A stretch of DNA of 64,000 nucleotides from Schmidtea nova (GCA_044892505.1 CM097882.1:331638001-331702000), one strand, 5' to 3'. Numbered from the stretch's first letter, positions 4,801 to 61,378 are shown. The notes: a model not told the origin generated them from the letters alone. Program-made: numbers and translations.

Positions 4801-5350
4801 TAATTGATTTTACTATGCTTTAGATTTTTATCGGAAAAATTGAGAGAAAAATTTATTTTAAAACGCTGCCGATCACCTTAATCGATACCCGATTTGAATT
4901 TAAAATTAGAAAATCAAAAGCAGGAACACTTGCTGAAACACTTCTAGAACTTTAACCCTCTTCAAAATGATTGAATTTGATTCTGGTTCGGTTTGGGATC
5001 CACCATTTGGTCCACATTTGACATAAAAATAATAATAATAAGAAAAACAAATAAGAATAAAGAAATATTAATGTACTTAAATAAATATCAGTAAAAATGA
5101 ATTAAAAGTAATAAAAAATATTAATTTAATATCAAAAATTAGAAGAAAATAAATGGAAAATGTCAAAATGTTAAAGAAAAAATGATATTTAATTATATTT
5201 AAAGCAAAATATAAAAAGTAATAAAGGAAAAAGAATTACTAAAATTCTTAAATCAAAATAAGAAAAGTTAGCGATTTAAAACAAATTAAATCGATTTTAC
5301 TTTTTAGAAAAATTTATTATTTATATTGATATGATGATCAGCTTCAAGCT

Positions 5351-5385
5351 GATTGGTCCAAAATTTGATCTGGTCAGTATAAATA
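5351..5385 (+). promoter_or_regulatory. Inverted CCAAT (GATTGG) plus TATA box, copy A
   Basis: GATTGG 5351, TATAAATA 5378. Same 27-29 bp spacing in four other copies. Confidence 0.7.
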
Positions 5386-5676
5386 CTGATCCAGATTCAG
5401 ATGAATTAGCATATTTTTGAGCATAGCAATTTGTTAGCATAGCATATTTTTTAGCATAACAAATTTTTAGCGCATTATAGCATTATCAAATTTTTGAACG
5501 ATCATTTGATACTGACATTTTACTGTTAAATTCTTAAAGATTTTTTGTGCAGAAATTCAAAGGTATATTTGATTTAATTTTGTTTTCTGTTATGATGATT
5601 TCTGTCACCATTATTTAAATATGAATAAATTTTTTGAAAGTTTATATGATTTACTTTTTGAATCTAGAATAATTTA

Positions 5677-5960
5677 AGCTTCTTCCACTGTGTGATCGGT
5701 GGAAGGAGACGACGATATTTATATGTTTATTTATATTTTATTGAGCTTCTTCCACCGTGTAATCGGTGGAAGGAGGCAACATTATGGTATTCAAGTAGCA
5801 ATTAGATATGAGTATAACTTTTATAAACAATTTTTTGGTCGAGCTTCTTCCACTGTGTAAACGATGGAAGGAGGCGAATTTATGTTATGTAGAGTAGTTA
5901 CTGTAGTTATATATATTATTCAAGGGGCTCCGATCACCGTGAAATCGGTGAAATGGAGGC
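5677..5960 (+). repeat. Array of four ~34-bp GC-rich hairpin repeats with AT-rich spacers
   Basis: agcttcttccacYgtgtRatcggtggaaggagRc at 5677, 5744 and 5842, plus a variant at 5926. Confidence 0.9.
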
Positions 5961-6745
5961 ATACTGTGCCGAGTAGAATGACTGCTCCGTACAGTTAGGC
6001 CGTCCGACCGGTGTAAAAGCGCCGCAGGGAGGGTAGGATTTTTACTAACCATGATCACTAACAATTTTTATTACTGGATAGTATAACCAGCTGGAGTTTT
6101 ATTTTATGATAGATTTGGTTATTATGAATTCGAATTTAAGTTTGATTTGGTTATTATGAATTCGAATTTAAGTTTGATTTTTAACAATAATAGATGTGAT
6201 TATTATTGACCTGATTTGACATTTGGTTAGTAAAATAGTATCCTATTTTTTGATTGTCACATCTGGGGTTTGTGGGCACAAAGCGGCAGATACAATGTAT
6301 AGAAATTCGTACAAAATACACCTTCTAACACAACAACATCAAAGAAAAATCGATAACTTTAATAGCGTAGTGATCTACCACGCAAGCAGAATATTATCAA
6401 TAGGCTAAAGGATCACATATTCAACACATATAATTAATATAATTGATTATCCTGAACCCTGTACATAGGGCAGTAGATCATAGTTGTATCTTTAATAATT
6501 TATTATCCTGATTGCTGTACATAGCACAGGCGTGAATAAATAAAATATATTATCAAATGAATGTATCTGATCGCTGTACATAGCGACAGTGTTGAAAGTA
6601 TAATATGAATATCATTTTCTTCTCCTGAATTGAAAACTAATGGACGTAAAAAATCATGAGATATATTTAAACCAGAGAAACCTAGTTCATATTAATATTA
6701 AATTCTAGAAAAATTTCATTCCACTCAACAACTCCTCAAACAGAA

Positions 6746-7303
6746 TTGGACAAGGCATGGCGTATTATCCGCAGCCTGGAGAAAGAGATGTTGCGAAAAT
6801 CCGAAAAGATAAAAGAAGCCGATGTTATGATTTCAAATTTAAAGAAGAGCTGGTTAAGTCCAGAGCAAATGAAGGCGCAAATTATCAAAAATCAACGCTC
6901 ACAGCGAGCAAACGACGAAATAAAGTTGGAACTGGATGCGACTAAGATGGAGCTGAAGAAATGCCTAAAATCAGTGACAGCTGCTTATCTCGACCAGGAG
7001 TTAAGACAACTCATCAGACCAATTACCTATCAGCATTGGGCTGAAGAGAAATCAGGATGTTCGAAAGGAACGAATACTGATGAACCATCTCAGGTTCAAG
7101 CAATAACAGCATCAAACACACCAAAAAGCGCTACAAATCCAGAAGTCAAAAAGAAGAAGAAGAGTAAGATGGGCGCGCGTCAGCGTCGATGGAAGAAGCA
7201 AGTACTTCAACAATTGGCACAACATTCAAAAGAAACTCCGGAGATCGATTTGACAATGAACTTTGTAGTTTCCGACGAAGACATTATTAAATATTTTGAA
7301 TAG
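6746..7303 (+). CDS. ORF2-family orphan protein (coiled coil, ELRxLIRPIT motif, Arg/Lys-rich segment), open frame; true start uncertain
   Basis: 185-aa ORF aligning by eye with the ORFs at 15868, 18196, 40225 and 44994. Confidence 0.8.
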   Translation: MDKAWRIIRSLEKEMLRKSEKIKEADVMISNLKKSWLSPEQMKAQIIKNQRSQRANDEIKLELDATKMELKKCLKSVTAAYLDQELRQLIRPITYQHWAEEKSGCSKGTNTDEPSQVQAITASNTPKSATNPEVKKKKKSKMGARQRRWKKQVLQQLAQHSKETPEIDLTMNFVVSDEDIIKYFE

Positions 7304-7637
7304 GGATTTTGTGATTTAGTTGTGTAAATTTTCGCTTATTAAATAATTTTTGTTTTGTATTTATTTTATTGTAAAGTATATGAAATAAAGTGATTTATTA
7401 AAGATTTAAAATAATTTAAATGAAAATATAGATTATAACTAACAATAGGATTGACATAAATATAATCTACAATAAGAGTATTAAAGAGATAACATATTAT
7501 AATTGATTAATGATTATTTGTTGATATTGTAAAGAAGGGGGCTGAAAGAAAAGTTAAAAGTTGAAACATTGTAAAGAGAAGGGGGCAGAAAGGAAAATTG
7601 AATTAAAAGATAATGAATGCGGATAGATTAAAGTAAA

Positions 7638-7888
7638 GCGTAAGTCCTTCTATCGGCAGCGAGACGAACCCGTGAACATAAATGGGGAGTAGTTTTAGCA
7701 ATAGAGCTCACCTTCCCATCATTGTTCAAACACCTTGCACATTTCCAACTCGATTATTACAGGGAAATGGTCGAAGGTGCTCGTGTGATATGTAAGCATT
7801 TTATGTTAGGTCTTGGATGGAGGAATCCCTAGAGCGTTTAATAATTGTTTTATCTTTTTGTTTTAACCCATCCAAAAACACCACAACA
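7638..7888 (+). ncRNA. 3' structured RNA module, copy A
   Basis: gcgtaagtccttctatcggcagc block; GTTTTA-GCAA-TAGAGC hairpin; TTGGATGG/CCATCCAA terminal stem. Confidence 0.7.
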
Positions 7889-8091
7889 CACTTCTAGAAC
7901 TTTAACCCTCTTCAAAATGATTGAATTTGATTCTGGTTCGGTTTGGGATACATTTACTTAGACATTATCCTTGAATAACGTAGTTTAATTTGATATTAAT
8001 AAATATATATTGATGTGATTCTTTATTTTAATCACCGATTTAAAATCTTAGTGAATGTTTACAGATTAACTATTGATTATGGGACAAATGG

Positions 8092-13600: not shown

Positions 13601-15188
13601 TGTTGGGCCAGCCAAGTAGAGGTCACGCTTGCAATTAAATAAAATAATAAATTAATTAATCAAAGTAGACAAATTACCCCACAGTAACAAGAAATCTAAA
13701 TAAAACAAAAATAAACATAAGAATAATCAATAAAAGAAAACACAATTACCAAAATGGTAACAAATGGGATTCATGTCTGACTGAACCTAGAAAATAACCT
13801 AGAAATCAATAGAATTAATAAAAAATATATTTGTAAATACCGACAATCCCAAGGAATGGATTAAATCTTAAAAACAAATAATGAAATAAAATTGACAAGT
13901 AAAGCAATCTGTTACCCATATTGGGATGCACGGTAAACAAAAATCGGTTAAAAAATAAGAATTGATAGAAAAAAATAAGAAATTAAAAAAAATAACGGAA
14001 ATAAAAAGAAATCGATCGAGAAATAAAGTAAACAGCGGTTATGGCGAATTAAAAAAAATAAAATAAAATGAAACGGAATAAAAATATAAAAATACGAAAA
14101 AATACAAGAAAAAAAGATACTTCTGATTATAATAAATAAACAATAAAATAGAAAAAAAAGAAAATAAATAGAAAATAAATAAAAATTATCAAATTAAATA
14201 ATCCAGCCAATTAAAGACTTGGTTCGGATTTGATTGGTTAACTGAACGTCAAAATTATTATATAAAGGGCGCTTGATTCAGCGTAGGAGCAATTATTTGC
14301 TAAGCATTTTTTTGAATTTTTTAGCATTAAATAATTATCATCGACTACTATCAGTGCAAATCATCGTACTTGAACTATAACCGTTGAACACCAAATTTTC
14401 CAAGAGACATCGAATCAATATCACCGAAATTCGTTTACCGAAGCGAACTATCTTAGAAGCACTTGTGGAAAATTTCATTGTAACTCTCTCAGTTTATAAT
14501 ATATGTATTATAGTTAAAAGTCAACGTGTTTTGTTATTCAATACTGTGTTTTCATATGTTCAGATTTTTCGTTTAAAAGAGATAATAATTTTCAGTTTTT
14601 GGAAGCTATGGACGGCCAATGGGGTCGCCAGCTCCGTGGTGATCTGTTTATTAGGTCTGCCCCAAGATAGGCTGGATGAAGAGAACATCAATTCCAATTG
14701 AAGTGTAGAGTAAGTAAAGTGAATTAAGGATGCCTAAATGCCAATGTAGACCGGTCACGTCCGAAATGTACGAAATTAGCTAACCGTGAACTAAAAGTAG
14801 AATCATGTAAATCGTGAATTACCCTAAATTATTTTGTCAGAAAACGAGATAGATAAAACGGAAAATTCCGTAGTTACATTGATTCCAAGCCGATCCAGCA
14901 ATTTGAAATACCAATTGAAATCATCAGCTAGAATACATTCTTTACCCGTGATTAATTCCGCAAAGTATGTGGATCGACATCATCTAATAAAATTACATAA
15001 TAACCGATAATAGCGAAACCACTACATCAGCCCCCATCGGAAGATGCGGAGCGCATTTTGAAATACTATAAAAATCATTATTAAAAGAAGAGTGAATATA
15101 CCCAAAAGGAAGTACAGTGAGTCAAGGGAGGAGTCGGGTGTAAAGGGGCCGGTGCACGAGGAGGAGAAATTATGACAATTTTATTCTG

Positions 15189-15509
15189 ATGGCAATGCCT
15201 CTGAAGCGGAATATCCCTTCCAAGCTTGCTCGAGAAATTTTCTTAGACTACTCAGAGACGCTCATCATCTATCGCGATAGCCCCGACCATATAATCTGGT
15301 TCGGTGGGCCGGAGTGGCCAATTGACGTGGCAGATACGTCAAAGTATTTTGTCGAGACTCCAATTGATGTCGCGAGTCTCGAGATCATACAGTTCGTGGG
15401 CACCATATCGGCCGGGGAATTTCGGAAAATTGACCAAGAAATATACGACGGAGATATATATGCACCTGTTCCCGACTCACTTGAAAGCCTAATTGGAGCT
15501 GATGCATGA
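15189..15509 (+). CDS. ORF1-family orphan protein (MPLKxIP...RDxPxxIIWxGxxEWPI), open frame
   Basis: 106 aa; motif shared with the ORFs at 25043, 33028, 39434 and 45819. Confidence 0.75.
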   Translation: MAMPLKRNIPSKLAREIFLDYSETLIIYRDSPDHIIWFGGPEWPIDVADTSKYFVETPIDVASLEIIQFVGTISAGEFRKIDQEIYDGDIYAPVPDSLESLIGADA

Positions 15510-15867: not shown

Positions 15868-16290
15868 ATGTCAAACATGAACGTAGATAGGAACGATCCA
15901 GGCATAGGGATCCTAAAGAGGAGAGTTGTAGAGCTGGAAGGTACATATTTTTAACCAGCCGATATGAAGATACAACTATTCAATTTAGCCCGGATGCGAG
16001 AAGCGAATGATGACCTCAAGTTAGGGCTCGAAGTTGTCCGGATCGAGTTGAGGAAGTGTAGAAAATATATTACGGGAAGATTCGTAAGGGAAGAGCTAGA
16101 GAGCCTAATCAGACCATTAACTCTATCTGAGTGGTACCCAGAGGCCGCCGCCATTAAACACTACGAGATAGAAGTACATGGACCACCGCCGAAGAGGAAG
16201 CGGAAGAGGATTAGTTCTAAAAAACGGCAGAGATGGAAAAGACAGAGGATGGAGGAAGAAAACAAACGACTTGTGTCCGAAGACGTGTAA
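15868..16290 (+). pseudogene. ORF2-family protein with one in-frame TAA
   Basis: MSNMNVDRNDPGIGILKRRVVELEGTYF*PADMKIQ...EELESLIRPLT...KRKRKRISSKKRQRWKR. Confidence 0.75.
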
Positions 16291-18975: not shown

Positions 18976-19208
18976 GCGTAAGACCTTCTAACGGCAGCGT
19001 GAACCCGCGAAAATAAATGGGGAGTAGTTCTAGCAGTAAAACTCACCTGCCCATCATTTTTTCAACCACCCTGCGCATCACCAACTTAACTGCATAGGGA
19101 AATAGTTAAGGGCGCTCGTGTGGAAGTTGCAAATGTTTATGTATGGTCATCGGGTATCCCTAGCATAATTACGTGTTGATTGTTTTCGGCCCACCCATAA
19201 ACCCAGCA
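18976..19208 (+). ncRNA. 3' structured RNA module, copy C, ending AAACCCAGCA
   Basis: gcgtaagaccttctaacggcagc; ATGGG/CCCAT; CTTAACTG/TAGTTAAG. Confidence 0.7.
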
Positions 19209-19519: not shown

Positions 19520-19741
19520 TGGTGGGTTGTTGATCGTCAATATGACCTTGACGTTGCTATGGCTCTCATCAACAACTCAACACATAAAACATTGAAATAA
19601 CCATCTTGCTACCCGTCACTATGTAACGTTGGTACTGTAACAAGTGGGTAGGTATTCGCAATCAGTGAGCGTCGTCAATACGAAACTATGATTGACCGAA
19701 TATCTCCTGTGTCCAGGGGCTACCGATAGAAGGTTTAATGC
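19520..19741 (-). ncRNA. 3' structured RNA module, subtype II (copy J)
   Basis: CCTTCTATCGGTAGC; CAATCA-TA-G..C-TCAC-TGATTG; CTTGTTA-CAGTA-CC-AA-CGTTAC/GTGACG-GG-TAGCAAG; GTTGTTGAT/ATCAACAAC. Confidence 0.7.
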
Positions 19742-25375: not shown

Positions 25376-25402
25376 TACAATGATAAGGTAGATTTTATAC
25401 AT

Positions 25403-33202: not shown

Positions 33203-33221
33203 TGCAATGACGAGATAATTA

Positions 33222-33584
33222 TCAGGTATTGCGCTCCGGAATCATTGAGTCTTCTGTTAAAGTTAGCAACTCTCTCCTAACCCAGTTCCATTTGAAATCC
33301 TGGTAGTGCAAAGGAACATATCTACTTTCTACGGAATTATGGTTTAATATCAATGATATCAATGATTTAATATCAACTATTCGCTTTTTTATTTCCGGCG
33401 TAATCACGAGTATGGAACGGCCATTGTCATGCCAAATCAGTGAGCTTCCGTTCGGATATTGTCTGATGTAAAAATTAATTTGCTGTAAAAATAATTTTGG
33501 CAGAGTTGAACAAAAAAACCTGTTTACTCGCTGTTTTATGTTTCCTGCCCTCATCGTACTTTTAATGGATTCAATTTTTATCAA
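33222..33584 (-). CDS. Orphan ORF, possible remote ORF1 paralogue
   Basis: 120 aa; FYIRQYPNGSSLIWHD resembles IYRDSPDHIIWF; ends 20 nt upstream of the clear ORF1 copy. Confidence 0.45.
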   Translation of the reverse strand: MIKIESIKSTMRAGNIKQRVNRFFCSTLPKLFLQQINFYIRQYPNGSSLIWHDNGRSILVITPEIKKRIVDIKSLISLILNHNSVESRYVPLHYQDFKWNWVRRELLTLTEDSMIPERNT

Positions 33585-40224: not shown

Positions 40225-40778
40225 ATGAGCAATACAGTCAAAAACCCTCATTCCGACGAAAATCAACTCTTACGTAAACGCATAAAAGTGCTGGAAAGTC
40301 ATGTAAAGAAGCCGAAATGAGTCAACTAAAAACGACCTGGTTTCACCCCGAACGGGTCAAAGAAATCCAGCAGCACAGATACCGGGCAGAAAGAGCTTTA
40401 GAGGATCAGGCCAGTGAAACTGCCGCAGTTAAGTTAGAGCTCAATAATTACCTGCGAGCCTCCACGAGAGAATTTATTGAACAATAGTTAAAGCCGCTAA
40501 TACGTACCAGCACCTTCATCCGTTGGGCAGAGTCGATCCATGTAGCTTATGGTATGCAAATGGAAACGAGCTTTACCTCTGTGTTAGAAAGCTTAAAAGA
40601 GATTCCCAAACCGGAAGGATCGCTGCGTACGAAGCGAAGGAATCGTTTAGGTGCGAGAAGGCGTCGCGAAAGGAGAGCCTATGCCGAACGAACAGGAATC
40701 GAGGTGGATTTCTTAAGTGGGATAACCGAAAGGCAGTTGTTGGAAGTCATTAATACGGATGTTTTGTTGGGTAAATAA
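40225..40778 (+). pseudogene. ORF2-family protein with one frameshift and one TAG (copy D)
   Basis: LLRKRIKVLE / LKTTWFHPERVK...EFIEQ*LKPLIRTSTFIRWAE...KRRNRLGARRRRERRAYA. Confidence 0.8.
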
Positions 40779-40955
40779 ATGTTTAGCGTACGAAGCGTTG
40801 TTTTTGACTGAATGTGGAATGCATGGAAAATTGAGTGAATGAGTAGATGATTAAATAAACACAATTCATTTGAAGGCCGAGGGATATTACGAAAATAAAT
40901 CAACTCTAGACGTAGCGGAATCAACAAAATAAATGGGGACCGAAAAAAAACCCAC

Positions 40956-41183
40956 ACAGACCTTCTATCGGTATTGGTGGACTTGTGAATAAATGAGGGA
41001 ATAGTAGCCGCAAGGTTGCTCATCTGCCTCATCATTTCACAACGTTGATACAGTACCATCATGATGAGTAGTTAGGGACACATCATGGGTATCAGTGGGG
41101 GAAGCGTGTTTATGTTGGCGAGATTACCCTGACAATTAACATCCAATAAAATCTCAGTTGAAAAACGTACCAACAAACCAGCA
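40956..41183 (+). ncRNA. 3' structured RNA module, copy D
   Basis: ATGAGG/CCTCAT; GTAGCC-GCAA-GGTTGC; CATGATG/CATCATG; TGTTGG/CCAACA. Confidence 0.7.
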
Positions 41184-43003
41184 TAAAATAGAAAAATTTC
41201 ATAAATTCACAATTTTCGGGCATTATTGCGCAGTAGAATTTTTTCGCATTTCACGGCTGTACGTTGTATTTTTAGAAACTATTCATACTTATAGTATTAA
41301 TATTTAATTTTTGGAATCTGTTGGTAGGACATGCAAAATTACAGATATTTTGTTATGCCGGAATATTTTTTAAAACTTAAAACTTCATATATTTTTAAGG
41401 CATAGTTTAAAATTATCGTGACTGATAGCTTTGTTACCATGTCGTAGGTATTTTGATTGAGTTTCAAGTTTATTGGTAATGTGTTATTATATGATTAAAT
41501 ATGTATTTATTATTTTTTGAAGAATTATATTTTTATTTAAATTTTTACTTTTACTTTTGTTAAGATCAAAAAGATGGGGGACTGACCTTAACACAAATTG
41601 ACTCCAATTAATAAAATAAGTAAATAAATAAATAAATGAATATCTATAAATATAAAGATATTAATGTGGTTGTGTGTATTAGTATAACCTGTAAAAGAAA
41701 AACCAACTTTACTTTCAAATATTTTTATTTAAACAATTTACAAACGATATTTTATAAATCGAATATTTATACAAAAGAACAATTAAGGTTATGGATTGAA
41801 TTAATCCTTACTGTTTGTGGCAGCCTGCAAGAAATCGTTGGAACCTCAGTAGCACAACGATCGCTAAGAATTTTAACACAAGAATTTTAACAAGCAAGAG
41901 GGTATGATTTTGGGGCACCCAGAGGATACTAAAGTAAGCTACGTTACTTTGTATCCGCTTGAAAAAAAATATCTTAAAACTAAAAAGATAAATTTATCTT
42001 TCACTAAATTCACAATCTCAAAATTATTACTACTTTACAAAATCAAATTTTAAATTACTTCGCTCAGCTGTAAAATTAATCTCCGTTTTTCTCCTCGATT
42101 ATGAAAATTCCGAATGTATTTATACTACTTTTCTGATGTAGATAATCAATCAGATCTACTCAGGAAACTTAATTAATTTTCCTATGATATTCTTCTGATT
42201 TTTAAACAGATGATCTATTTTCCCTTTGATTCTGCAAATCTGGAATTTCAATTATCGTCCGTTCTCTCTCTCAGCTGTCGCCAAACGCAATACTAAATTT
42301 CTTCAAATAATTCAATTTTTTCTCCACCAACAAATTTCCAGCTTCAGTAATAATTAGATTTTTCTCCAACTGATTGTTTTCTGCTAGATTTAATTTCTTC
42401 TTTTAATTTCTTTTTTTTTTAATTTCTTCGTTCGCTAAAAAGTTGACACTTTTCCTCAGTTCTGTCGTTGCCTGAAGTCTTCTCCCAGTTTTACTGAAAC
42501 ACCATGTTATATATATTAAAAATGAAATTTGCTTACCCAAATTTAGCTACAAACAATTACTATTTAATTTCTAGCAATTACCAAAGATGACTCACTTCTA
42601 TTTTTGGTAATTGCTTTTTCTAGATAGATTATTTTAGGTTATTATTTATTTTATTTTAGCTATTTTTAGTAATTTTTTTATTTCTAATTAAGTATTATTA
42701 GTAATTTATTATTGTCAAACCTCAAGACATTAAGGCCAAAGGCCTGATCCTAACACTTTCATCACATTTTCTCCAAAATTAACATCATTATATCGTTATT
42801 CATTTATTTATATGCATATTTATATTTTTTTTCATTAAAACTATTTTTATACGTCAACCTAGTCGCTGTACCGTCATTAGTCGCTTTAGTGAATCATCAG
42901 TTCGCTGGAGGCTTTCAGTGTTCTGTTCCATATTTTCAATGAAGTAAGCGCAAACATCCAAAAACGCTTCATCTTATACTTGGCTATATGAGGAGTAGTG
43001 GAT

Positions 43004-43980
43004 TGGCCAAGCGCAAGGTTTGTTCAAAATAATTAACGTCTAGAATCCTATTACATTTTTAATGAAATGCGATTTGGTATTCAAAGACGCAAAAAAAAAG
43101 TACTGTATTTATATTTATTTATATCAAATTGTATAACTCTTATAATTAGATAAAAATTCGGACATAATAAAAATAAATCAAAAATATGCATTCATCTCGT
43201 GCATTGCGTTTACTTAATGAACGTCGTCTTTACATCTCTGAAAGTATTCGCAAAGTCAATTAGAAAGTCAAACATATGAAAAATTCGTAAATGACCAATC
43301 GAAGGTAGTAGAAATGCTGTATCGAATTATGCCTACAGATTACACTCGATAATCTTCCGTTGAATTTATACTCTAAATCGCAAACAGTATTAATAGAAAC
43401 TTCTAAAAAAATTTATCTAGACTTTTGAGTATTTAAGATCGCCAAAAGAACCGTATTGAAATTTTATATATACTTTATTTTTAAAAATTCATGGCCAAGC
43501 GCAAGGTTTTTTCAAAATAATTAACGTCTAGAATCCTATTACATTTTTAATGAAATGCGATTTGGTATTCAAAGACGCAAAAAAAAGTACTGTATTTATA
43601 TTTATTTATATCAAATTGTATAACTCTTATAATTAGATAAAAATTCGGACATAATAAAAATAAATCAAAAATATGCATTCATCTCGTGCATTGCGTTTAC
43701 TTAATGAACGTCGTCTTTACATCTCTGAAAGTATTCGCAAAGTCAATTAGAAAGTCAAACATATGAAAAATTCGTAAATGACCACTCGAAGGGTAGTAGA
43801 AATGCTGTATCGAATTATGCCTACAGATTACACTCGATAATCTTCCGTTGAATTTATACTCTAAATCGCAAACAGTATTAATAGAAACTTCTAAAAAAAT
43901 TTATCTAGACTTTTGAGTATTTAAGATCACCAAAAGAACCGTATTGAAATTTTATATATACTTTATTTTTAAAAATTCAT
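43004..43980. repeat. Near-identical 488-bp tandem duplication
   Basis: Units start tggccaagcgcaaggttt at 43004 and 43492. Confidence 0.92.
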
Positions 43981-44433
43981 GTATGATCGGAATTAATTTT
44001 TGTAAAAAACTATAAAATACTTTTATGTCGCAATACATAAAAATTTTAACTTGAATTATTAGATTATAATATGTGTGAATTTAAATTTTTTATTATTATA
44101 AATTTTATAGAATTTCAAATTTGGTCATAAAAATAAAATTTACCTTTATAGATAATATATTATGAAAAAATTAGGATATAAAAGTTATAAATCAAAAATT
44201 TTCTTAGAATAAAAAAATTATAAATCGAAAATAGTATAATATAAAATTTTAAATCAAGAATTTTATTATGATATTGAATATAAAAATTAGGAATTTGGAA
44301 TTTTATTATTATATAAATTTTATGAAATTGTAAATTTAAAATTTTGTAAGAAAAATTACAAAGATAATTGTTGTCATTTTAATAATTAAAATTTAATTCT
44401 AAAAATTATTTTTTATAAATAAATAAATAAATA

Positions 44434-44673
44434 TGATGGGGTTGTGGATGGGTTTGTAAAAAACATATGTTTGAATTGTTGCGTTCTAGGATCTCTCACC
44501 CACAGCCTTGCATAAACTGATCGTCAACACGCGTATGCCCTTGACTATTCCCTATTAGCCAAGTTGGTACTGCATACGGTGGTGGAAAAATGATGGGCAG
44601 ATGAGCTCTTTTACCAGAACTACTCCCCATTTATCTTCCCTCGGGTTCGTGCTGCCGATAGAAGGTCTTACGC
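44434..44673 (-). ncRNA. 3' structured RNA module, copy E
   Basis: Nearly identical to copy F over ~150 nt; TGTGGGTG/CATCCACA terminal stem. Confidence 0.7.
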
Positions 44674-44993: not shown

Positions 44994-45578
44994 TTATTTC
45001 ATAAAATCCAAGTCGATTTCGTCCATCAGTTCTAATTTTGTTAACGCGCTTAATCGATCTATCTGCATATTCATCCGCTTGGCAAATTCTCGGCGACGAC
45101 GTCTTTGTCGCGATCCTAATCGGGTTTTTCGGGTTTGATGGATCATCCTTGCAGGAAGTTCTGGTTTTGGTTGGATATCGTGGGGTGTGGAGGAAATGTC
45201 CACGACCGGGCTCGGTTCCATGTTATGATCGTTCTCGGTTCCTGTTGCAATTTCCCGATATTGACCCTCTGTCCATCGCCGGGCTGTAATTGGGCGAATC
45301 AGTGCCCGCAATTCGCTATCAATATAGCTTTTCGTCACGGAATTTAGGCAATTTCGTAGTTCCCTTTGTACGGCATCCAGCTCCGTCTTGGTTTCGGCCA
45401 AAGCTTCCTGCATTTTAGCCATTTTCGACAGTTGAGTTTTCATTTGATCTGGAGAAAACCAACGAGTCTGAAGTTCTTCATTTGCGACCCTGAGTCGCTT
45501 GATCTGTCGTTTTTGGTCTCTCATTTTTCGTTCTTGGACTTGATTGGTAAATTCCCTGGACTTTTCGATGGAATTCAT
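44994..45578 (-). CDS. ORF2-family orphan protein, intact 194 aa
   Basis: ATG to stop open; WFSPDQMK, ELRNCLNSVT, ELRALIRPIT, RLGSRQRRRRREFA. Confidence 0.85.
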   Translation of the reverse strand: MNSIEKSREFTNQVQERKMRDQKRQIKRLRVANEELQTRWFSPDQMKTQLSKMAKMQEALAETKTELDAVQRELRNCLNSVTKSYIDSELRALIRPITARRWTEGQYREIATGTENDHNMEPSPVVDISSTPHDIQPKPELPARMIHQTRKTRLGSRQRRRRREFAKRMNMQIDRLSALTKLELMDEIDLDFMK

Positions 45579-45818: not shown

Positions 45819-46238
45819 TCACTCCATGGACAATTTTCCCCGATAGGAAAAGATAGCACGGATTTGCAGGTTGGTTTTGAATCCATTTGAGGGGTTGGTG
45901 GAATCCTTCTTGCTCTCTCTGAGCGGTCTGATCGCGACATTATAAATGATGCTCAGTTCCTTAAACGTTGAGGCGGAAATGTAGCCCCAATAAATGACGA
46001 AGTTTGGGAATCCATTCTCGTCCAGCATCAGGACGAACCACTCCAAGTGCCAGGGTTCGAAATCATCGCCCGGAATTATGGGCCAATTGGCGCATCCTCG
46101 ATACCACACATGGTGCCGTGGGTGATCCCACACGGTGAAGGGAAATGCTGTGTCCAACTCCCTTCTCCAGGCCCACATTTTCAGATGGACCTGCTGAATG
46201 ATTTCGAATGGAGCGCGTTTTAGGGGGCTGATCCGCAC
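45819..46238 (-). CDS. ORF1-family orphan protein; the frame stays open about 100 nt upstream to a splice acceptor near 46340
   Basis: PLKRAP...VWDHPRHHVWYRGCANWPI...EWFV...YWGYISA. Confidence 0.7.
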   Translation of the reverse strand: MRISPLKRAPFEIIQQVHLKMWAWRRELDTAFPFTVWDHPRHHVWYRGCANWPIIPGDDFEPWHLEWFVLMLDENGFPNFVIYWGYISASTFKELSIIYNVAIRPLRESKKDSTNPSNGFKTNLQIRAIFSYRGKLSME

Positions 46239-47607
46239 TCGGTTCCGTTTGAGCTGCCCATTTTTCCATCCCCATTGATTTTCCTTTCGTTGGTTCCCAT
46301 TAGTTTTTTCCTCAATAATTTGAACTTCGACATTTTTTCTAGATCATAATAAAAATCATTTAAATATCTAAGAGACATATTTGTGGAGTTTGATATTCTC
46401 CCTCTTCGCTTATTTTATTTTATTACACGCATTCCCTTTATGCATTGGGTCGAGTTTATGCTGAGAAAACTGTCGACTGAGGTAGTAAAACATATATTTT
46501 ACTGATGCCTGTTTTCTAATTTTTACTGTTCTAATCGCGATTATTCGTTGGGATATCACTGTTGAAAAATTTATTGTTTGTAGTTACTCTGCAGTGATAT
46601 TAAAAAAATGGTTTTGATATAAAATCCTTGATACCTTCTAATAGCGCATCTCATGCCTATTCTGGGGTCAGCTGTCTCGATACTTAGGAAGATTTAGTAA
46701 TATAGTGCTCGTATTACAACCGTTTCGTGTAATTTCCGCCCCTTAATTCATTGTCCCATGTGCAAAACCTCAAAAACTTTAATATATGTTAGATGCCACT
46801 AATTTTCCTACCGAGTGTGGAGCTTCTAAGCACCACGACGCGGACTTACACCCTGGGAACCTATAGCTCCCATTCGGCGCACAAATCGTCTATAATGTAT
46901 ATATGACAAAAAATAATATTATCAATACATATAATTAATATAACAAAATTTATAGCAAAGTCATGAACAACAGCATCATAAAATAAAATAAAATAAAAGT
47001 ACCTAATTTCGTGTACGTCACAACTTTGATTTCAAAATTCTTGATAAGGTAGCACTATGTCTGAACGATTGTCTGGTCTCAAATGATCGTCTGAATAACT
47101 GTGTTACAAAATCAGTCAAAAATCAAGTTAGATTAAATCAAGTCAGAGTCAAGTCTAACTTAAGTCAAATTCACGCAGTTCTTGTTCTTAAATGAATTGC
47201 ACTCGGTATTTATATCGATTTGTTTGGATCAGATTAACCAATCAGGTTTTGCCGCCTCCATTATTTATTTTATTTTTTAATTATTTTCTGTTTTTTCAGA
47301 TTAAATTCACTCTTGGTGGTCCAAATTTTCAGTCTATTTTCCAATTAAAATGACTATTATTTTTGTTTAAATTATTAATTTTTTACCTTTTATTTGTTTT
47401 AGGTACCTCATATGACGGCTAATTTTACAATTTCTCTTGGCCACTCTATTTCCTAATTTATAAAAATTTATCTATAATTTATCTATAATTTATTTATAAT
47501 TTATTTATAATTTCAAATCGAACATTTAATTTCTTAGTCTACGTTTTTTTCTTTTTGTTTTAATTGTTACTAATTTATTTTCCTTTTTACTCTTTTTAGC
47601 TGGCCCA

Positions 47608-49064: not shown

Positions 49065-49286
49065 GCATTAAACCTTCTATCGGTAGCCCTTGGACCCAGG
49101 AGATATTCGGTCAATCATAGTTTTGAATTTTCGACACTCACTGATTGCGAATACCCACACATTTGTTACATTAACAACGTTACATTGTGACAGTCAACAA
49201 GATGGTTAATCCAATGTTTTGTATATTGAGTTGTTGATATGAGCCATAGCAACGTCAAGGTCATATTTACGATCAACAACCCACCA
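49065..49286 (+). ncRNA. 3' structured RNA module, subtype II (copy K)
   Basis: Homologous to J and I; TATTCG/CGAATA and GTTGTTGAT/ATCAACAAC stems. Confidence 0.68.
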
Positions 49287-52140
49287 GTTATTTTGAATAA
49301 AAAATAAGATGATATCGATGTAAGTTGAAAAAAATCCGTTATATATATATATATATATGTTTATGAAATAGTGAAAAAACATGAATTTGTTTTTGTCGGA
49401 AATATATTTAACATTAATTTACCTGAATTGTTCAAAAATGAAAATCCCAATGATGTAGGTATATATTAACAGAAGTAACATTGCACGACAATTGTTAACA
49501 AGAAAATATACAATTAAAAATTACTAGTAGACTTGCAGACTATACTGTATTTACTCAAAGGGTGCCGCTTATTTTAAATAGTCAACACTGCTGCTTATCA
49601 AATCTTATTATTCTGTCGATCTAGTAAGCTTTTGTAGTTAATCGTTTCTAGTTAGTAATTTAAATAATTTCGCTCATTAAAATTTGGCAAATGTCACAAT
49701 AAATTTGATGATTTTTATAGTCTTAGGGGGCCCATCAGCTATCTATGTAGGCGCGTGATTGACACTTATCGAAAAAATACCTTGTCCCTGTATTTCCAAT
49801 GCAAATTTTATAACCAATCTACGACCCATCAGGTGATTTATTTCCTCGCAAATACTTTTAGACAGATATGATGCTTTTTACTAGTATTGCTCAACTTCGA
49901 TCTGCATTGCTCTAAAAATGTGTCAAACTTCACCATGAGCTCCAAAATGCCCATTTGGTTATTGATTGTAACGTTCCGCGGAGGACATTGAAGTATAAAT
50001 ACTTAATAAGGGGTTGTGATCTGTGTTATTCTTGTGTTCTGGTACTCGAATATGACAATTTATCCAATCACTAAGCCAATTTCTAAACCCAGACTCCTGA
50101 CAACTAAATAATCTATAACAAAGACAAAATACCTCGCCCAATGAAAGCGAACCATTTCTTTTTGTTGGGCTGGTACAATCCAGTTTTACAACAAATATCA
50201 GCACGATAATAGGGAAATCAGTACAATAATAAAAAATAATTAAATATAAATAAAACTTCTTCATAGACATGTGTAAATCCGATTGTCTGAATTTAAAGGA
50301 GAGTAGTCGAGGTAACGCACCTCACCTGTTCTCTAATTCCAAAAGCCCTCATACACAGTTCCAACGTAATTATCGAGAATGATTACGTGTTTACAGACAA
50401 AAGATGGTTAATTTTCTTGCTTTTTTCATTTTTTAAAATTTTTTCTTAGTTTGATGGTAGATTGAAAGCCTAGACACAATATTTGAGTAATTCTACCACA
50501 ACTAGACCAACACCTTTTTACAATTTCTTTGTTGAATAAAGGTCGTGCCTAAATATCGCTTCTGCTTCTTATCAATCATCTCGGAAGCGTCAAAATTTCC
50601 TATTTTTGCTGAATTGGTAGATTCATTTTAAACTCACGTACAATATCGTCAATAATTTTTCAGTTTGGAAGATTTTTCTCAAACGCTTTTTATTCGATGC
50701 AAAGCTGGACGGCAGATTCTGCAAAAGATAAAACGACGGAGGTGATCGCCTTAGATTGTTCAGCTCAAGCAGCCTCTTCTTCAAGTTCTATTTTCTGTTG
50801 TGCCTTCCTCGTCGTCAAAATGGCTGTAAACTGCTGGCGTTTGTACAAAGAAAGTTATTAATTTCGGAATGCTCAACTGTTCTGCAGATTGTATTTTTCA
50901 CTTTTTAACCCCCTTCTTATCATACACCCCTTCTATCATACAGCATATATGAAACACTCTTTTATTAGGCCCTAAATGAGAAACGGCTTGGTAAATGTAT
51001 TATTAATGAAAATATTATAAAATAAAATTTATCAGCAATATTTAAAAAGTAATTTAAATAAAATATAGATAGAAATTGAAGCTTAAAATAAAATATCAAT
51101 CAATAGTTCAATATAATCCATCAAATTAGTTACAATTATGCGAAAAAATTTACGTGTTACTTTTCTTCTCATTTCGTCCTGTCCGTTGTAATGTTTAAAT
51201 AAGATTATGATAGTGTCCGTTTAGTGATTATGCCGTTGTTAACAAACCCACAATATTCCGAAAACGAAAAGGATGGTAAGATGATTAATCGTGAACAGTA
51301 CAACGTTTTTCAATGATGATCACATGATCGCCAAATGTATCTATAAAATGTCGGCTTTTCATTTATACATCTGCTACACTTCTTGTTAATTGTTCTTAAG
51401 CTACTTGCCAGTATTAGCTATCACTTTCAGCTATTTTACATCATTAAAACTTATGCATCTGTAGTGTTCTTTCGCTCCTTTAGTTAATTTCAAAAAATTA
51501 TCAATTTAGTCCCTATAAAATATTTAATACGATTTTGGGTGCTCCTTCCAAACTTTACCTTAATGGCTATTTCTCCATTGTCAATAAGTAGTAAAATGAA
51601 AATTTGTGTATGATTGTAGTTATACTTGTTTAATAAAAATTGTAATTTAAGTAATAAAATGTTAAAAAACTTAAAATATATTAGTTAATAAATTCTAAAA
51701 ATTCAAAAAATTAATCAATTTATATATTAAAAAACTCATTATTAGAATTTGAGGAACGTTTATTAGAAGTCTCAATTTTATAATTAAAATTACTTTTGTT
51801 CCATATTTTATTAAGTCGGTTGTGAATTATTTATTAAATTATAATAATATATGTCCTTGTTCTCTTTTCAGATCATATCTGACCGAATTTGTATCAGACA
51901 TGTAACTAGTATAACGTATACCAACATAACTCATACTTTTACATTCTAAACACATCATAATATGCATTATTCCAAAATTTAAAAATTGTTTTCTTAATCA
52001 TCATTTTTTATAACAAAAATAGCTTTGGTTGATAATAGATATTTTATATTATAACTTTTTAAAATAAATTTTAAACAAACAAATATGGTTATAGATACCA
52101 TAAGATATTTTCATTTTTATGAGACTAGATCAGGGTGCTC

Positions 52141-58491: not shown

Positions 58492-59854
58492 TGTTGGGCT
58501 GGTGAAATCAAAAATAAATTTAATTAAAAATTATTAAAAATTAAATACATACAAAAAGAAACAAAGAGAAACGCACGACAAGACGTTAAGCAGTAAAATA
58601 ACGCAAGGGAAAATAAAAACAGTTAAGTACAATAGTAGTCATACGAACCGCATCCTTTAAGTCGGTCAAGATAGGGTTGAAGCGATAAAAAAGAGGAATC
58701 TCAAAAGAGAGCACACAATTTGAGTGCAGGTCGGATTTACACACGAAGGACCGCACGAGAATTGAATGTGGAAGATCAGTGCTTGTAAAGTGATTATGAA
58801 AAGCATGATCAAAGAATAAAATCGGTATCAGAATAAAGAAAATAATTTATTAAAAATTATAGAATAAATCCCCATTGAAATATCGCAAAATTAACAGAGA
58901 TAGGAATGTAAATAGATTTAAAATTAAATTGTTTTAATCAATAAATGCACAATAAAACAATAGATACACACCTAATTTAATATAATAAATATTTTCGAAA
59001 ATAAATAAATCAAATTATAAAGTTAAATTTATGAAAGATAAATAAATGCTCACTTATTAAAACTAATAAGTGAGTTAAAATCATTAATAAATTATGTAAA
59101 TAACAAAATATGTAAGTGTCAGTGAAATTAGTATAAATAGATATTGAAAAATCACAATCAAAACTTACTTGGCATTAATTTACTGAAAGCAAAAATTTGG
59201 TTTTGATTTCGCCAGTCGTGTGGATCGATTTTAAGCAGGTATTTTTGTTATTTTGGTGATATGTGTTGGGTCAATTGTTGTTCAATGGTCACAATAAAGT
59301 TTTGAGGCTAAATCTTTGCTTAAGGGATTCCCGATTAAAATCTGAATAGGGGCGTCCCTCTGTGGTGCAATCCACGAGGGTGAATCCGTGGCTGTGGAGC
59401 TCAGTAGTTCCACGTCATGGTGAGTGACTAAATTATTAAAACTAGAATAGTAAATAATTTGTAAGGGCGGCGAATGCACACGGGATATTCTAAGTACGAA
59501 TGTACACCAAATGTTTTATTAGTTACGAATACACATAGGTAGTTAGTTGTGGTCAACCACCAAGTCACGTAGGATATGGTTATTAAATTGAGAGCTAGAG
59601 ATCGAGCGAAATTTAAGTCGACGGATATAAAGAATCAAGCGTAAGACCTTCTATCGGCAGCACGAACCCGAGGGGAAAATAAATGGGGAGTAGTTTTGGT
59701 GACGGAGCTCACCTGCCCATCATTTTTCCACACCGTATGCAGTACCAACTTGGCTAATAGGGAATAGTCAAGGGCATACGCGTGTATTAGTCATTTTATG
59801 TAAGGTTATGGGTGCGGAATCCCTAGTATTTAAAACCCACCCATAAACCCAGCA
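58492..59854 (+). mobile_element. TG..CA element copy F (1363 bp, no recognisable ORF1/ORF2)
   Basis: TAAA|TGTTGGGCTG...AAACCCAGCA|TAAA; TATAAATA at 59132; complete 3' module. Confidence 0.85.
59639..59854 (+). ncRNA. 3' structured RNA module, copy F
   Basis: GTTTTG-GTGA-CGGAGC; CTTGGCTA/TAGTCAAG; TATGGGTG/CACCCATA. Confidence 0.72.
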
Positions 59855-60161
59855 TAAACATGAACGATAATATTTTTTTCAAACATTAATTCCTCGACCT
59901 GTGTGGTAGTTACGTTCTGAAAAAAGAGCGCGCAAACCAAAACGCGTACTGAACCCACTTTTGTAATAAATTTGAAGAATACGTTCCAAATTTTAAATTT
60001 ATAATAAAAAATTTAATTATAAGTACATAGTTCAAATAAAGTCTTTAAGATTTCGGTCCTCTATCCACAAGTTTAGCAATTTTTCTATTACAAAATTTCG
60101 AATTTTTTTGTGGTTTTTGAAGATAATGGTGTAGAACGGGCAACTGAACGTTTCATTTATA

Positions 60162-61378
60162 GGGTTTCACGACCAATTTAATAATATTTGCAACCAATTT
60201 CATAATTTCTCGTTCAATTTCATAATTTTTGCAACCAATTACATAATTTTTGCAATCAAATTCATAATTTCCACATCAATTTAATAACTTTTGCAATCAA
60301 ATTCATAATATTTGCAATCAATTTCATAAAAAAAATCCATATTTTTAATTTAAAAAATATTTTATTAAACTCCCATGTCAAACTCAATTTTCGATTCAAA
60401 CTTAGAAGAGGACATAGAAGAAGCAAGTTTTGAGGAACGAAATCATACAAACGTTTCTTTGATGTCAACAAACCCTACAAACACAACTTCCGCCTCGCCT
60501 GTCGCGGAAAAAATCGACATACCTAGGAAGATAAATGTAAGTATTTCGGCTAATGATAGAGAGCGGATTATTCCTCGATGAAGTTGGATTTGGGGTGGTA
60601 ACACGCCCATCTCGTGGAAGAAGCTCCAAAGGATCGTCGGCCTATCTCTCTGTGCCGGCCGCAAGAAGCAGGAATATTTCTGTCGTTTCTGCAATGAACA
60701 AATACGGTATGATCTACCATAAAATTCAGGAAAGAGCCGTTATGGTGAAGATTTTAAAACATGCTTAAAAGAACTCCACGATTGCTGTATTCGCATAGGA
60801 ATAGTTTCCCCCATCTTTATCATGGATAATGCCCGCATACATCATTACAGGGGGTTGATTGATGACGCAGAAATTTCATCGTATAGGATACAATACCTTC
60901 CACCTTATTCTCCGTTATTGAACCCCATCGAAAACGTGTTTTCCGTTTGGAAAAATTGTGTCATTCGCAGCAATGCGCGAACTGAAGCAGAATTGAGAAG
61001 CAATATTACCGACAATTTTTATCAAATAACACCTGAACATTGTGCTTCTTTTTATCGAAAAATGCTTAAATATTTACAAAAAGCGGAGTTAAGATTGGAG
61101 ATTCTTGAATTTTTTGTTTGAATTTTTTTTAAGAATTTTTTTTTTGAAGTTTAACTTTAAAGGTTTAATTTACAGTATACATTTATAAATTTAGAGTTTA
61201 TTTTTTAATTTTTTTATGAAATTGATTGCAAATATTATGAATTTGATTGCAAAAGTTATTAAATTGATCGGGAAATTATGAATTTGATTGCAAAAATTAT
61301 GTAAGTGGTTGCAAAAATTATGAAATTGAACGAGAAATTATGAAATTGGTTGCAAATATTATTAAATTGGTCGTTTCC
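60162..61378 (+). mobile_element. IS630/Tc1-like transposon, internally deleted
   Basis: ~165-bp near-perfect TIRs built of ~20-bp subrepeats; TA at both outer ends; FLDEVGF, IMDNARIH, LPPYSPLLNPIENVFSVWK. Confidence 0.88.

What the first reader, a model, noticed from the sequence alone, without database searches (positions are those of the whole stretch)
59639..59854. Conserved ~230-nt 3' RNA module with extensive covariation in six subtype-I copies
Seen in A, B, C, D, E and F. (1) Sequence-conserved 5' block (GCGTAAGA)CCTTCTATCGG(C/T)AG. (2) Hairpin with outer stem ATGGG/CCCAT, AATCG/CGATT (B) or ATGAGG/CCTCAT (D), a conserved internal loop RTA / TCAYCTG, and an apical stem that changes sequence but keeps pairing and a GNRA loop: GTTTTA-GCAA-TAGAGC, GTTTTT-GTAA-AGAAGC, GTAGCC-GCAA-GGTTGC, GTTTTG-GTGA-CGGAGC. 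(3) Hairpin with a CA(G/T)(T/C)A bulge, CC/GG pairs and an A(A/T) bulge, topped by CTTGGCTA/TAGTCAAG, CTTAACTG/TAGTTAAG, CATGATG/CATCATG or CGTAAGTA/TATTTACG. (4) Terminal stem TATGGGTG/CACCCATA, TGTGGGTG/CATCCACA, TTGGATGG/CCATCCAA or TGTTGG/CCAACA. Inference: selection acts on single-stranded structure. It could be a ribozyme, a packaging or RT-recruitment signal, or a 3'-end processing element. I do not recognise it as a known class.
Basis: partly seen in the sequence, partly recalled or inferred. Interest (0 to 1): 0.92.

Follow-up and report, generated by a model that had tools for sequence, protein, structure and literature searches.

The report
Structured 3' RNA tail of retroposons
A roughly 220-base RNA-folding module with strong compensatory base-pair changes forms the common 3' end of ten dispersed mobile-element copies in this window. 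It is most likely the handle by which a reverse transcriptase recognises the element's RNA, which makes it a new example of a known kind of signal.

Summary
The window holds ten copies of the module: six of subtype I, three of a second subtype, and one diverged partial copy. Every quoted stem was found.

A covariance model built from subtype I alone recovers the other four copies and nothing else. On that alignment 87% of pair cells are standard pairs, against 39-44% when partners are slid. 33 of 47 pairs show changes on both sides, against 8-17. G-U pairs outnumber A-C pairs 51 to 18, so the strand that carries the upstream ORF is the one that folds.

No Rfam family matches any copy, even at E<=5. 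No relative turned up in the metagenome loci returned, IMG/VR or GTDB.

All copies stop at the same 3' nucleotides (...CCA-N-CA or CCACCA) without poly(A). Their flanks are unrelated and their 5' extents differ. One copy is bracketed by a 66-nt direct duplication, which bounds a 2.9-kb element with no reverse transcriptase. Five copies follow a roughly 190-aa coiled-coil and basic ORF with no detectable homologue.

Best reading: this is the 3'-terminal recognition domain of non-autonomous retroposons, analogous to R2 3' UTRs and to LINE/SINE shared tails. Its function is inferred and no partner enzyme was seen. It is a new family of a known kind, of moderate interest.

The parts
59639..59854 (+). 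Module copy named in the finding (subtype I). Possible closing helix P1: 59639-59646 with 59794-59801. Conserved single-stranded block: 59647-59673. Hairpin H2: 59674-59729. Hairpin H3: 59730-59785. Terminal hairpin H4: 59806-59846. Free 3' tail ends at 59854.
   Evidence: (168.9 bits). No ORF-B lies upstream. Similarity to copy 44434-44673 (89%) starts sharply at the first base of the module.
44434..44673 (-). Module copy, subtype I
   Evidence: (170.2 bits)
7638..7885 (+). Module copy, subtype I; 3' end of the element bounded by the 66-nt duplication
   Evidence: (160.1 bits)
18976..19208 (+). Module copy, subtype I
   Evidence: 160.5 bits
16481..16684 (+). Module copy, subtype I (the finding's copy with AATCG/CGATT); terminal hairpin unclear
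   Evidence: (114.8 bits)
40953..41183 (+). Module copy, subtype I, the most diverged; source of many compensatory changes
   Evidence: 127.3 bits
8092..8316 (+). Module copy, subtype II; this element is 5'-shortened and its similarity to the other two subtype-II copies starts near 7997
   Evidence: 45.1 bits, E 2.4e-10 with a model built without subtype II
19520..19741 (-). Module copy, subtype II; the element body extends at least to 20336
   Evidence: (48.9 bits)
49065..49286 (+). Module copy, subtype II; the element body starts at or before 48497
   Evidence: (34.8 bits)
50271..50424 (+). Diverged partial module copy; hairpins 2 and 3 are recognisable and the conserved 5' block is degenerate
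   Evidence: 28.3 bits, E 8.6e-6
5003..7886 (+). The one element with both ends defined: a 2.9-kb body ending in module 7638-7885. It holds ORF-B and two arrays of small hairpins. No reverse transcriptase was found in it.
   Evidence: It is bracketed by the direct repeats 4937-5002 and 7887-7952. ORF pieces gave no Pfam match.
4937..5002 (.). Left copy of the 66-nt direct duplication flanking element 5003-7886 (putative target-site duplication)
   Evidence: D13, 98%; 62 nt at 100%, E 5e-32
7887..7952 (.). Right copy of the 66-nt direct duplication; it starts directly after the module's last bases
6686..7303 (+). ORF-B (coiled-coil plus basic tail): an open frame of 205 codons with no interruption. 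There is no ATG at the position where copy 44994-45578 starts.
44994..45578 (-). ORF-B, intact from ATG to stop, 194 aa
18208..18789 (+). ORF-B, broken: at least one in-frame stop; no frameshift within the aligned stretch
15925..16290 (+). ORF-B, broken: one in-frame stop in the aligned stretch, and the N-terminal third is not detectable
40278..40778 (+). ORF-B, broken: one in-frame stop; no frameshift within the aligned stretch
45822..46343 (-). ORF-A candidate (174 codons) upstream of ORF-B in the 44434 element; weakly similar to 15144-15506
   Evidence: pairwise E 5e-4. No Pfam match, no homologue, and the AlphaFold model is unusable.
15144..15506 (+). ORF-A family member upstream of ORF-B in the 16481 element

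Best explanation
The module is the structured 3'-terminal domain of the RNA of a family of retroposons that spread through an RNA intermediate. The copies seen here are non-autonomous. Its job is to be recognised at the RNA's 3' end by a reverse transcriptase supplied in trans, so that cDNA synthesis starts at the last nucleotides (...CCA-N-CA).

Shown:
- It is an RNA-level fold on the sense strand, made of two long covarying hairpins plus a terminal hairpin.
- These are joined by sequence-invariant unpaired blocks.
- It sits at a common, exact 3' terminus of dispersed copies.

Inferred:
- The invariant loops and junction are contact sites for the enzyme, and the helices hold them in place.
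- The coiled-coil and basic ORF-B protein coats or chaperones the RNA in the way LINE ORF1 proteins do.
- Subtype II and copy 59639 are ORF-less riders on the same handle.
For: 1. Fold under selection. 33 of 47 pairs change on both sides and 87% of cells are paired, against 39-44% for slid partners. A sequence-only alignment gives the same picture. A model built from subtype I alone finds subtype II at E 1e-7 to 1e-11 and gives no false hits in 64 kb.

2. Strand. G-U 51 against A-C 18, and folding z-scores are lower on the sense strand in 4 of 5 subtype-I copies tested. The folded strand is the strand of ORF-B.

3. Terminal position. All nine full copies end at the same nucleotides, their downstream flanks are unrelated, and none has poly(A).

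4. Retroposon-like copy pattern. The copies are dispersed in both orientations with different 5' extents: subtype-II 8092 shares only about 95 nt upstream, while the other two share at least 800 nt. One copy is bracketed by a 98%-identical 66-nt direct duplication that starts right after the module.

5. The module is far better conserved than its surroundings. It is 74-89% identical between lineages whose ORF-B is only 32-40% identical in protein and whose intervening UTR cannot be aligned.

6. The module is shared by otherwise unrelated upstream sequence: 59639 against 44434 is 89% identical from the first module base and unrelated before it. This is the pattern of LINE/SINE tail sharing.

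7. Established knowledge. Stringent-type LINE enzymes recognise a 3'-tail stem-loop (PMC4176376). R2 protein binds its structured 3' UTR to template target-primed synthesis (PMC11194090). Staggered nicks give target-site duplications, and LINE ORF1 is a coiled coil plus a nucleic-acid-binding domain (PMC2881922). ORF-B is predicted as two long helices plus a basic helix.
Against: No reverse transcriptase or endonuclease was found anywhere in the window among about 45 ORF pieces scanned, so the partner is hypothetical.

Only one copy has a clear flanking duplication. At 66 nt it is long, and it could be a coincidental repeat.

No relatives from other genomes could be retrieved. All covariation therefore comes from ten paralogous copies in one 64-kb window, some of them closely related.

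Binding, priming and transcript ends were not observed.

The closing helix P1 is weak: it shows no double change within subtype I. The loop-loop pairing between H3 and H4 is no better than shuffles.
Confidence: 0.55

Rival explanations
1. RNP-assembly or packaging signal for the element's own ORF-B protein. The coiled-coil and arginine-rich protein binds the module in cis, and this binding, not enzyme recruitment, is what selection maintains.
For: ORF-B lies 180-335 nt upstream of five of the six subtype-I modules. It has a basic helix after a long helical hairpin. The module has invariant unpaired blocks suited to sequence-specific protein contact.
Against: Subtype II, copy 59639 and copy 50271 keep the module without any ORF-B. 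The module is more conserved than ORF-B. Its position at the exact terminus has no obvious packaging reason. This reading is compatible with the best explanation and is not exclusive of it.
Confidence: 0.15
2. Self-cleaving ribozyme or other 3'-end processing element that defines the transcript end at ...CCA-N-CA.
For: The copies have a precise common end without poly(A). A multi-helix junction carries invariant single-stranded nucleotides. Ribozymes are known in other retroelements (own knowledge: HDV-like ribozymes in R2 and hammerheads in Penelope-like elements).
Against: No match to any ribozyme family, or to any other of the 4227 Rfam models, at E<=5 on any copy. The genomic end of a retroposon is set by where cDNA synthesis begins, so a precise end needs no cleavage. 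Nothing in the sequence marks a cleavage site.
Confidence: 0.1
3. Regulatory 3'-UTR element (stability, localisation or translation) of a dispersed host gene family that encodes the coiled-coil protein; not a mobility signal.
For: A conserved ORF is followed by a conserved structured UTR element. Two ORF copies are uninterrupted.
Against: Three of five ORF-B copies are interrupted. Four module copies have no ORF. Similarity ends at one exact nucleotide with unrelated flanks. One copy has a flanking 66-nt duplication. The copies lie among decayed DNA transposons. ORF-B has no homologue among 1.84 billion cluster representatives, which is unusual for a host gene family.
Confidence: 0.08
4. Terminal cis-element of an endogenised RNA replicon (a viral 3' promoter or tRNA-like end), or a DNA-level hairpin signal of a rolling-circle transposon.
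For: Subtype II ends in CCACCA. The end is structured and has no poly(A).
Against: No tRNA-like fold (ARAGORN found none; no Rfam match). No viral or Rep/helicase protein signature in any ORF scanned. No hit in IMG/VR. The G-U excess argues for RNA over duplex or single-stranded DNA. A flanking duplication is not expected for Helitrons (own knowledge).
Confidence: 0.05

Closest known systems
R2 retrotransposon 3' UTR RNA
   Same: It is a multi-helix domain of about 200-250 nt at the extreme 3' end of the element RNA. Its structure is conserved through compensatory changes while sequence drifts, and poly(A) is not required. In R2 it is bound by the element's protein to template target-primed reverse transcription (PMC11194090).
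   Different: No Rfam model matches. The flanks here are unrelated AT-rich DNA, not a 28S rDNA site, and no rRNA was detected. No R2-type protein is encoded upstream. The copies carry a small coiled-coil ORF or no ORF.
Shared 3' tails of stringent-type LINEs and their SINE partners (for example the zebrafish and eel L2-clade elements)
   Same: The 3'-terminal stem-loop region is the recognition signal for the partner enzyme (PMC4176376). The same tail sits on otherwise unrelated upstream sequences, as with 59639 against 44434 and subtype I against subtype II. The 5' extents are variable.
   Different: Known tails are short, with one stem-loop plus a short tandem repeat. This one is a three-hairpin domain of about 220 nt, and no consistent terminal repeat was seen. 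No RT-bearing partner is in the window. No pol III head or tRNA-like part was found in the ORF-less copies.
ORF1-only non-autonomous LINE derivatives (HAL1-type; own knowledge)
   Same: The element with defined ends (5003-7886) carries a coiled-coil plus basic nucleic-acid-binding-like ORF and a 3' tail but no reverse transcriptase.
   Different: ORF-B has no detectable homology to LINE ORF1 families or to anything else: no Pfam match, none among 1.84 billion representatives, none in PDB by sequence or fold. There is no poly(A). The lineages are old, with 32-40% protein identity.
Penelope-like elements and their hammerhead-bearing terminal repeats (own knowledge)
   Same: They lack poly(A), have a structured terminal RNA, and produce variable and sometimes long target duplications.
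   Different: No hammerhead or any other ribozyme match, no GIY-YIG or RT ORF, and no terminal repeat arrangement.

Membership tests
Any curated RNA family (Rfam 15, 4227 models, including R2 element RNA, ribozymes, tRNA and SRP/7SL-derived families) | Sequence-plus-structure match to the family's covariance model | tested here: not met
   There were no matches at gathering score in the window. At E<=5 across the whole window nothing falls on any of the ten copies. At E<=10 on 59500-59950 there was only a chance miRNA hit of 14 bits.
Stringent-type LINE/SINE 3' tail | Lies at the extreme 3' end of dispersed retroposon copies, with a common terminus and variable 5' ends | tested here: met
Stringent-type LINE/SINE 3' tail | The same tail is present on an autonomous element encoding reverse transcriptase and endonuclease | tested here: inconclusive
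   No RT or EN domain was found in about 45 ORF pieces of this 64-kb window. The rest of the genome was not available.
Stringent-type LINE/SINE 3' tail | Conserved stem-loop(s) maintained by compensatory change | tested here: met
Stringent-type LINE/SINE 3' tail | The tail is bound by the partner enzyme and needed for its action | not testable with these tools
   This needs biochemical evidence.
R2 3' UTR | Element inserted at the specific 28S rDNA site and encoding an R2-type protein | tested here: not met
   The flanks differ between copies and are AT-rich. No rRNA match. No such ORF was found.
Self-cleaving ribozymes (hammerhead, HDV-like, twister, pistol, hatchet, hairpin and others in Rfam) | Catalytic-core sequence and fold of a known class | tested here: not met
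   A new class cannot be excluded by sequence alone.
tRNA-like 3' structure | Cloverleaf or acceptor-like fold ending in CCA | tested here: not met
   ARAGORN found no tRNA or tmRNA in the window. Only subtype II ends in CCA.
LINE ORF1-like protein (for ORF-B) | Homology to a known ORF1 family, or a coiled coil followed by a nucleic-acid-binding domain | tested here: inconclusive
   No Pfam hit. No homologue. No PDB hit by sequence or fold. The AlphaFold model shows two long helices plus a basic helix, mean pLDDT 72. The architecture is alike, but no homology is shown.
Helitron 3' end | Short hairpin followed by CTRR, insertion between A and T, and no target duplication | tested here: not met
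   The ends are ...CCAGCA, CCATCA or CCACCA with varied following bases. A 66-nt flanking duplication is present in one copy.

The most novel reading that the evidence does not exclude
The module is the shared 3' RNA domain of an old lineage of RT-less retroposons that has not been described. These elements carry their own orphan coiled-coil and arginine-rich protein, which has no homologue in 1.84 billion protein clusters. On this reading the domain is either a new self-processing RNA or a handle that hijacks an unrelated cellular or transposon polymerase, and not a tail copied from a LINE partner.
Probability: 0.12. Interest if true: 0.75.

Novelty: new member of a known kind. Interest (0 to 1): 0.45.

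Why it matters
This is a well-supported candidate for a new structured-RNA family: 33 covarying pairs from only ten copies, and absent from Rfam. If it is the recognition handle for a reverse transcriptase, it marks which enzyme family is or was active in this genome. It would also add a large multi-helix example to the few 3'-tail signals whose architecture is known, which matter for understanding template choice in target-primed reverse transcription. The contrast between an orphan ORF at 32-40% protein identity and an RNA domain at 74-89% nucleotide identity shows that the RNA is the most constrained part of these elements.

Tried and rejected
1. Rfam at gathering score and at permissive E-values found nothing on any copy.

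All were chance matches: blastn of the modules found only the seed.

3. The IMG/VR scans with two motifs also gave only chance hits. The covariance model gave at most 18 bits, all on the seeded motif. A specific two-gap pattern gave 0 hits in IMG/VR and 0 in GTDB genomes.

4. A profile of ORF-B against 1.84 billion representatives gave 0 hits. Exact look-up found it not on record. Pfam, PDB sequence search and PDB fold search found nothing.

5. ORF-A had no homologues, and its AlphaFold model has pLDDT 36, so no fold search was made.

6. A ciliate-type genetic code as the reason for the few long ORFs was rejected. TGA-only ORFs are no longer than expected.

7. No reverse transcriptase was found upstream of any copy in five Pfam scans.

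8. The MAFFT alignment of both subtypes misplaces the helices, so it was replaced by a model-guided alignment.

9. A loop-loop (kissing) pairing, AGGGA in the H3 loop with TCCCT in the H4 loop, is conserved in sequence in subtype I. It is no better than shuffles per copy and is absent from subtype II, so it is left as unproven.

10. A local hairpin closing the conserved block was considered as an alternative to the long-range P1. It cannot be aligned between subtypes, so the choice stays undecided.

11. A literature search for the conserved 11-mer found only unrelated primers.

12. Host identity: the nearest relatives of the Merlin-type transposase come only from unnamed metagenome or Logan contigs.

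Full report
**What is there**

The stretch 59639-59854 reads as the finding says. Its conserved 14-mer, allowing 2 mismatches, occurs 8 times in the window against 0.2 expected. A profile search added two diverged copies. A covariance model confirmed ten copies in all and found nothing else in 64 kb on either strand with filters off.
- Six copies are the finding's subtype I: 59639-59854+, 44434-44673-, 7638-7885+, 18976-19208+, 16481-16684+, 40953-41183+.
- Three form a second subtype the finding did not count: 8092-8316+, 19520-19741-, 49065-49286+.
- One is a diverged partial copy: 50271-50424+.

All stems quoted in the finding are present in the copies as they stand. Two details need correcting:
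- The GNRA loop is not universal.
- The terminal stem is unclear in two copies.

**The fold**

I parsed the helices by hand, starting from the 59639 copy. I wrote them as a structure on a sequence-only MAFFT alignment of the six subtype-I cores. The layout, from 5' to 3', is:
- A possible long-range closing helix, P1.
- A roughly 27-nt conserved single-stranded block.
- Hairpin H2, made of three stacked helices separated by small internal loops, with an invariant UA on one side and UCAC on the other.
- Hairpin H3, made of an outer helix, a conserved 5-nt bulge, two C-G pairs, a 2-nt bulge and an 8-bp top.
- A short linker.
- A terminal hairpin, H4.
- A free tail of 3-6 nt.

On the unfitted alignment, 87.9% of pair cells are standard pairs, against 40-46% when the 3' partners are slid by 1-3 columns. 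23 pairs carry changes on both sides against 2-9, and no shuffle of 500 reaches any observed measure.

A covariance model built from this alignment found the three subtype-II copies at E 1e-7 to 1e-11, although they were not used to build it. It is a search profile.

On the resulting ten-copy alignment the figures are as follows:

| Measure | Observed | Slid partners |
|---|---|---|
| Pair cells that are standard pairs | 87.1% | 39-44% |
| Pairs changed on both sides | 33 of 47 | 8-17 |
| Covariation score | 0.615 | 0.08-0.14 |

The per-helix counts of pairs changed on both sides are as follows. "Helix" is the number used in the output:

| Helix | Part of the fold | Pairs changed on both sides |
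|---|---|---|
| 1 | P1 | 2 of 8 |
| 2 | H2 outer | 4 of 6 |
| 3 | H2 middle | 7 of 7 |
| 4 | H2 apical | 4 of 6 |
| 5 | H3 outer | 3 of 3 |
| 6 | H3 middle | 7 of 7 |
| 7 | H3 C-G pairs and top | 6 of 10 |

Three caveats apply:
- That alignment is fitted to the model.
- The ten sequences are paralogues from one window.
- Some are close relatives, for example 59639 and 44434 at 89%.

P1 is the weakest helix. It shows no double change within subtype I.

H4 has a different sequence in each lineage and is complementary in seven of nine copies at the same relative place. The stems are TTATGGGTG/CACCCATAA, TGTGGGTG/CATCCACA, TTGGATGG/CCATCCAA, TGTTGG/CCAACA and GTTGTTGAT/ATCAACAAC. Per-copy shuffle support is only modest.

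The proposed loop-loop contact between H3 and H4 is not supported beyond chance.

**Which strand, which molecule**

G-U pairs outnumber A-C pairs 51 to 18 in the helices. Folding z-scores favour the given strand in most subtype-I copies. That strand is the sense strand of the upstream ORF. The fold is therefore a property of a transcript.

**What it belongs to**

All nine full copies stop at the same nucleotides...CCAGCA, CCATCA, CCACA, CCAGCG or CCACCA. After that point the flanks are unrelated and AT-rich, and none has poly(A).

Upstream, five of the six subtype-I modules are preceded at 180-335 nt by a roughly 190-codon ORF, ORF-B. Its copies are 32-40% identical in protein.
- Two copies are uninterrupted.
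- Three are broken, each by an in-frame stop: at least one in the 18976 element, and one each in the 16481 and 40953 elements.
- One of the broken copies also lacks a detectable N-terminal third.

ORF-B has no match anywhere I looked:
- No Pfam match.
- No homologue among 1.84 billion cluster representatives.
- No PDB relative by sequence or fold.

Its model shows two long helices, a disordered linker and a basic helix.

A second orphan ORF family, ORF-A, lies upstream of ORF-B in two elements and also occurs elsewhere in the window.

The untranslated stretch between ORF-B and the module cannot be aligned between lineages, while the module is 74-81% identical between them. The module is therefore the most constrained part of these elements.

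Copy 59639 is 89% identical to 44434 from the first base of the module and unrelated before it. The subtype-II copies have AT-rich upstream sequence without an ORF. Two of them share at least 800 nt of it, and the third shares only about 95 nt.

Copy 7638 is followed at once by a 66-nt sequence that also occurs, 98% identical, 2.9 kb upstream. Read as a target-site duplication, it bounds an element at 5003-7886 that holds ORF-B, hairpin arrays and the module, but no reverse transcriptase.

No reverse transcriptase or endonuclease was found in about 45 ORF pieces scanned across the window. The window is otherwise rich in decayed DNA transposons of the Merlin, Tc1/mariner, piggyBac and hAT types.

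**How it most likely works**

The features that point one way are:
- A common exact 3' terminus.
- No poly(A).
- Variable 5' ends.
- Dispersed copies in both orientations.
- One flanking duplication.
- A strand-specific fold shared by otherwise unrelated upstream sequence.

These are the marks of retroposons copied from the RNA 3' end. In such elements the 3' tail is the recognition site of the enzyme, as in stringent-type LINEs (PMC4176376) and the R2 3' UTR (PMC11194090). Staggered nicks produce flanking duplications (PMC2881922).

I therefore read the module as the 3' recognition domain of non-autonomous retroposons. The helices would act as scaffold and the invariant unpaired blocks as contact sites. 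ORF-B would be an ORF1-like RNA-binding coat.

The fold, strand, terminus and copy pattern are shown. Recognition by an enzyme, the role of ORF-B and the existence of a partner are inferred. Confidence is about 0.55.

The rivals are:
- A packaging site for ORF-B, which is compatible with the main reading.
- A self-processing RNA.
- A host 3'-UTR element.
- A viral or rolling-circle terminal signal.

**Comparison with what is known**

No Rfam family matches any copy, even at E<=5. ARAGORN finds no tRNA-like part.

The module works like an R2 3' UTR or a LINE/SINE shared tail, but it is not a member of any described family. It differs from both in three ways:
- Its size and three-hairpin plan, compared with the short LINE/SINE tails.
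- The lack of a specific insertion site and of an R2-type protein, compared with R2.
- Its carriers: RT-less elements with an orphan coiled-coil ORF.

**Verdict**

It is a new RNA family of a known kind, and its function is inferred, not shown. Interest is moderate. It would rise if a whole-genome census found no RT-bearing partner or if end-mapping showed self-processing.

**Note on procedure**

Early exploratory scripts printed stop-to-stop ORF piece bounds before I knew that some pieces belong to genes of a mobile element. Those tables implicitly show where frames are interrupted. The profile HMMs and the covariance model were used only for searching and aligning.

Noticed in passing
window 5682-5871: Three copies of a 25-nt perfect hairpin (stem CTTCCAC.G / CG.TGGAAG), plus a fourth related hairpin near 5925-5955, lie inside element 5003-7886. 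The region 5660-5990 folds far better than shuffles (z = -5.5). They occur in no other copy.
   Followed up: partly
window 6450-6590: Three spaced small hairpins lie just upstream of ORF-B. They share the string CTGTACATAG but have different complementary stems (CCCT/AGGG, TGCT/AGCA, CGCT/AGCG). They look like repeated protein-binding operators. Only this element has them.
   Followed up: partly
window 15144-15506 (+), 25046-25495 (-), 33026-33241 (-), 45822-46343 (-): A second orphan ORF family, ORF-A, has no Pfam match and no homologues. In two cases it lies upstream of ORF-B. The copies near 25 kb and 33 kb have no module downstream.
   Followed up: partly
window 10043-11327: A Merlin/IS1595-type DNA transposon with terminal inverted repeats of about 100 nt (91% complementary) and a 230-aa ORF that matches DDE_Tnp_IS1595. 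Its closest relatives (90% identity) come only from unnamed metagenome and Logan contigs.
   Followed up: partly
window 60169-61374: A Tc1/mariner-type element remnant: 166-nt inverted repeats (98% complementary) around an ORF piece that matches the DDE_3 endonuclease domain.
   Followed up: no
window 23274-23645 (-) and 31490-31843 (-): A piggyBac-type transposase fragment (DDE_Tnp_1_7) and a hAT-associated DUF4371 fragment. The window is a graveyard of several transposon classes.
   Followed up: no
window 16697-17920 and 43004-43981: Two tandem duplications. One is 2 x about 600 nt at 90% identity, between module 16481 and the next ORF-B. The other is 2 x 488 nt at 99% identity, about 450 nt beyond the 3' end of module 44434.
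   Followed up: no
window 1369-1474, between the N runs 1119-1304 and 1499-1689: A near-perfect palindromic hairpin scores below threshold against several miRNA precursor models on both strands (best: mir-3688, 63 bits against a gathering score of 84). It is probably a transposon-derived inverted repeat and not a conserved miRNA. The N runs were left untouched.
   Followed up: no
window 4378-4781 and 41432-43032: Another repeat family, 84% identical over 286 nt and inverted, with a short conserved ORF piece. It lies next to the left duplication of element 5003-7886 and downstream of module 40953. Its nature is unknown.
   Followed up: no
window 18976-19741 and 7638-8316: Module copies sit close together. 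18976 (+) and 19520 (-) lie tail to tail 312 nt apart. 7638 (+) and 8092 (+) lie head to tail. This may reflect insertion preference or simply the density of the cluster.
   Followed up: no
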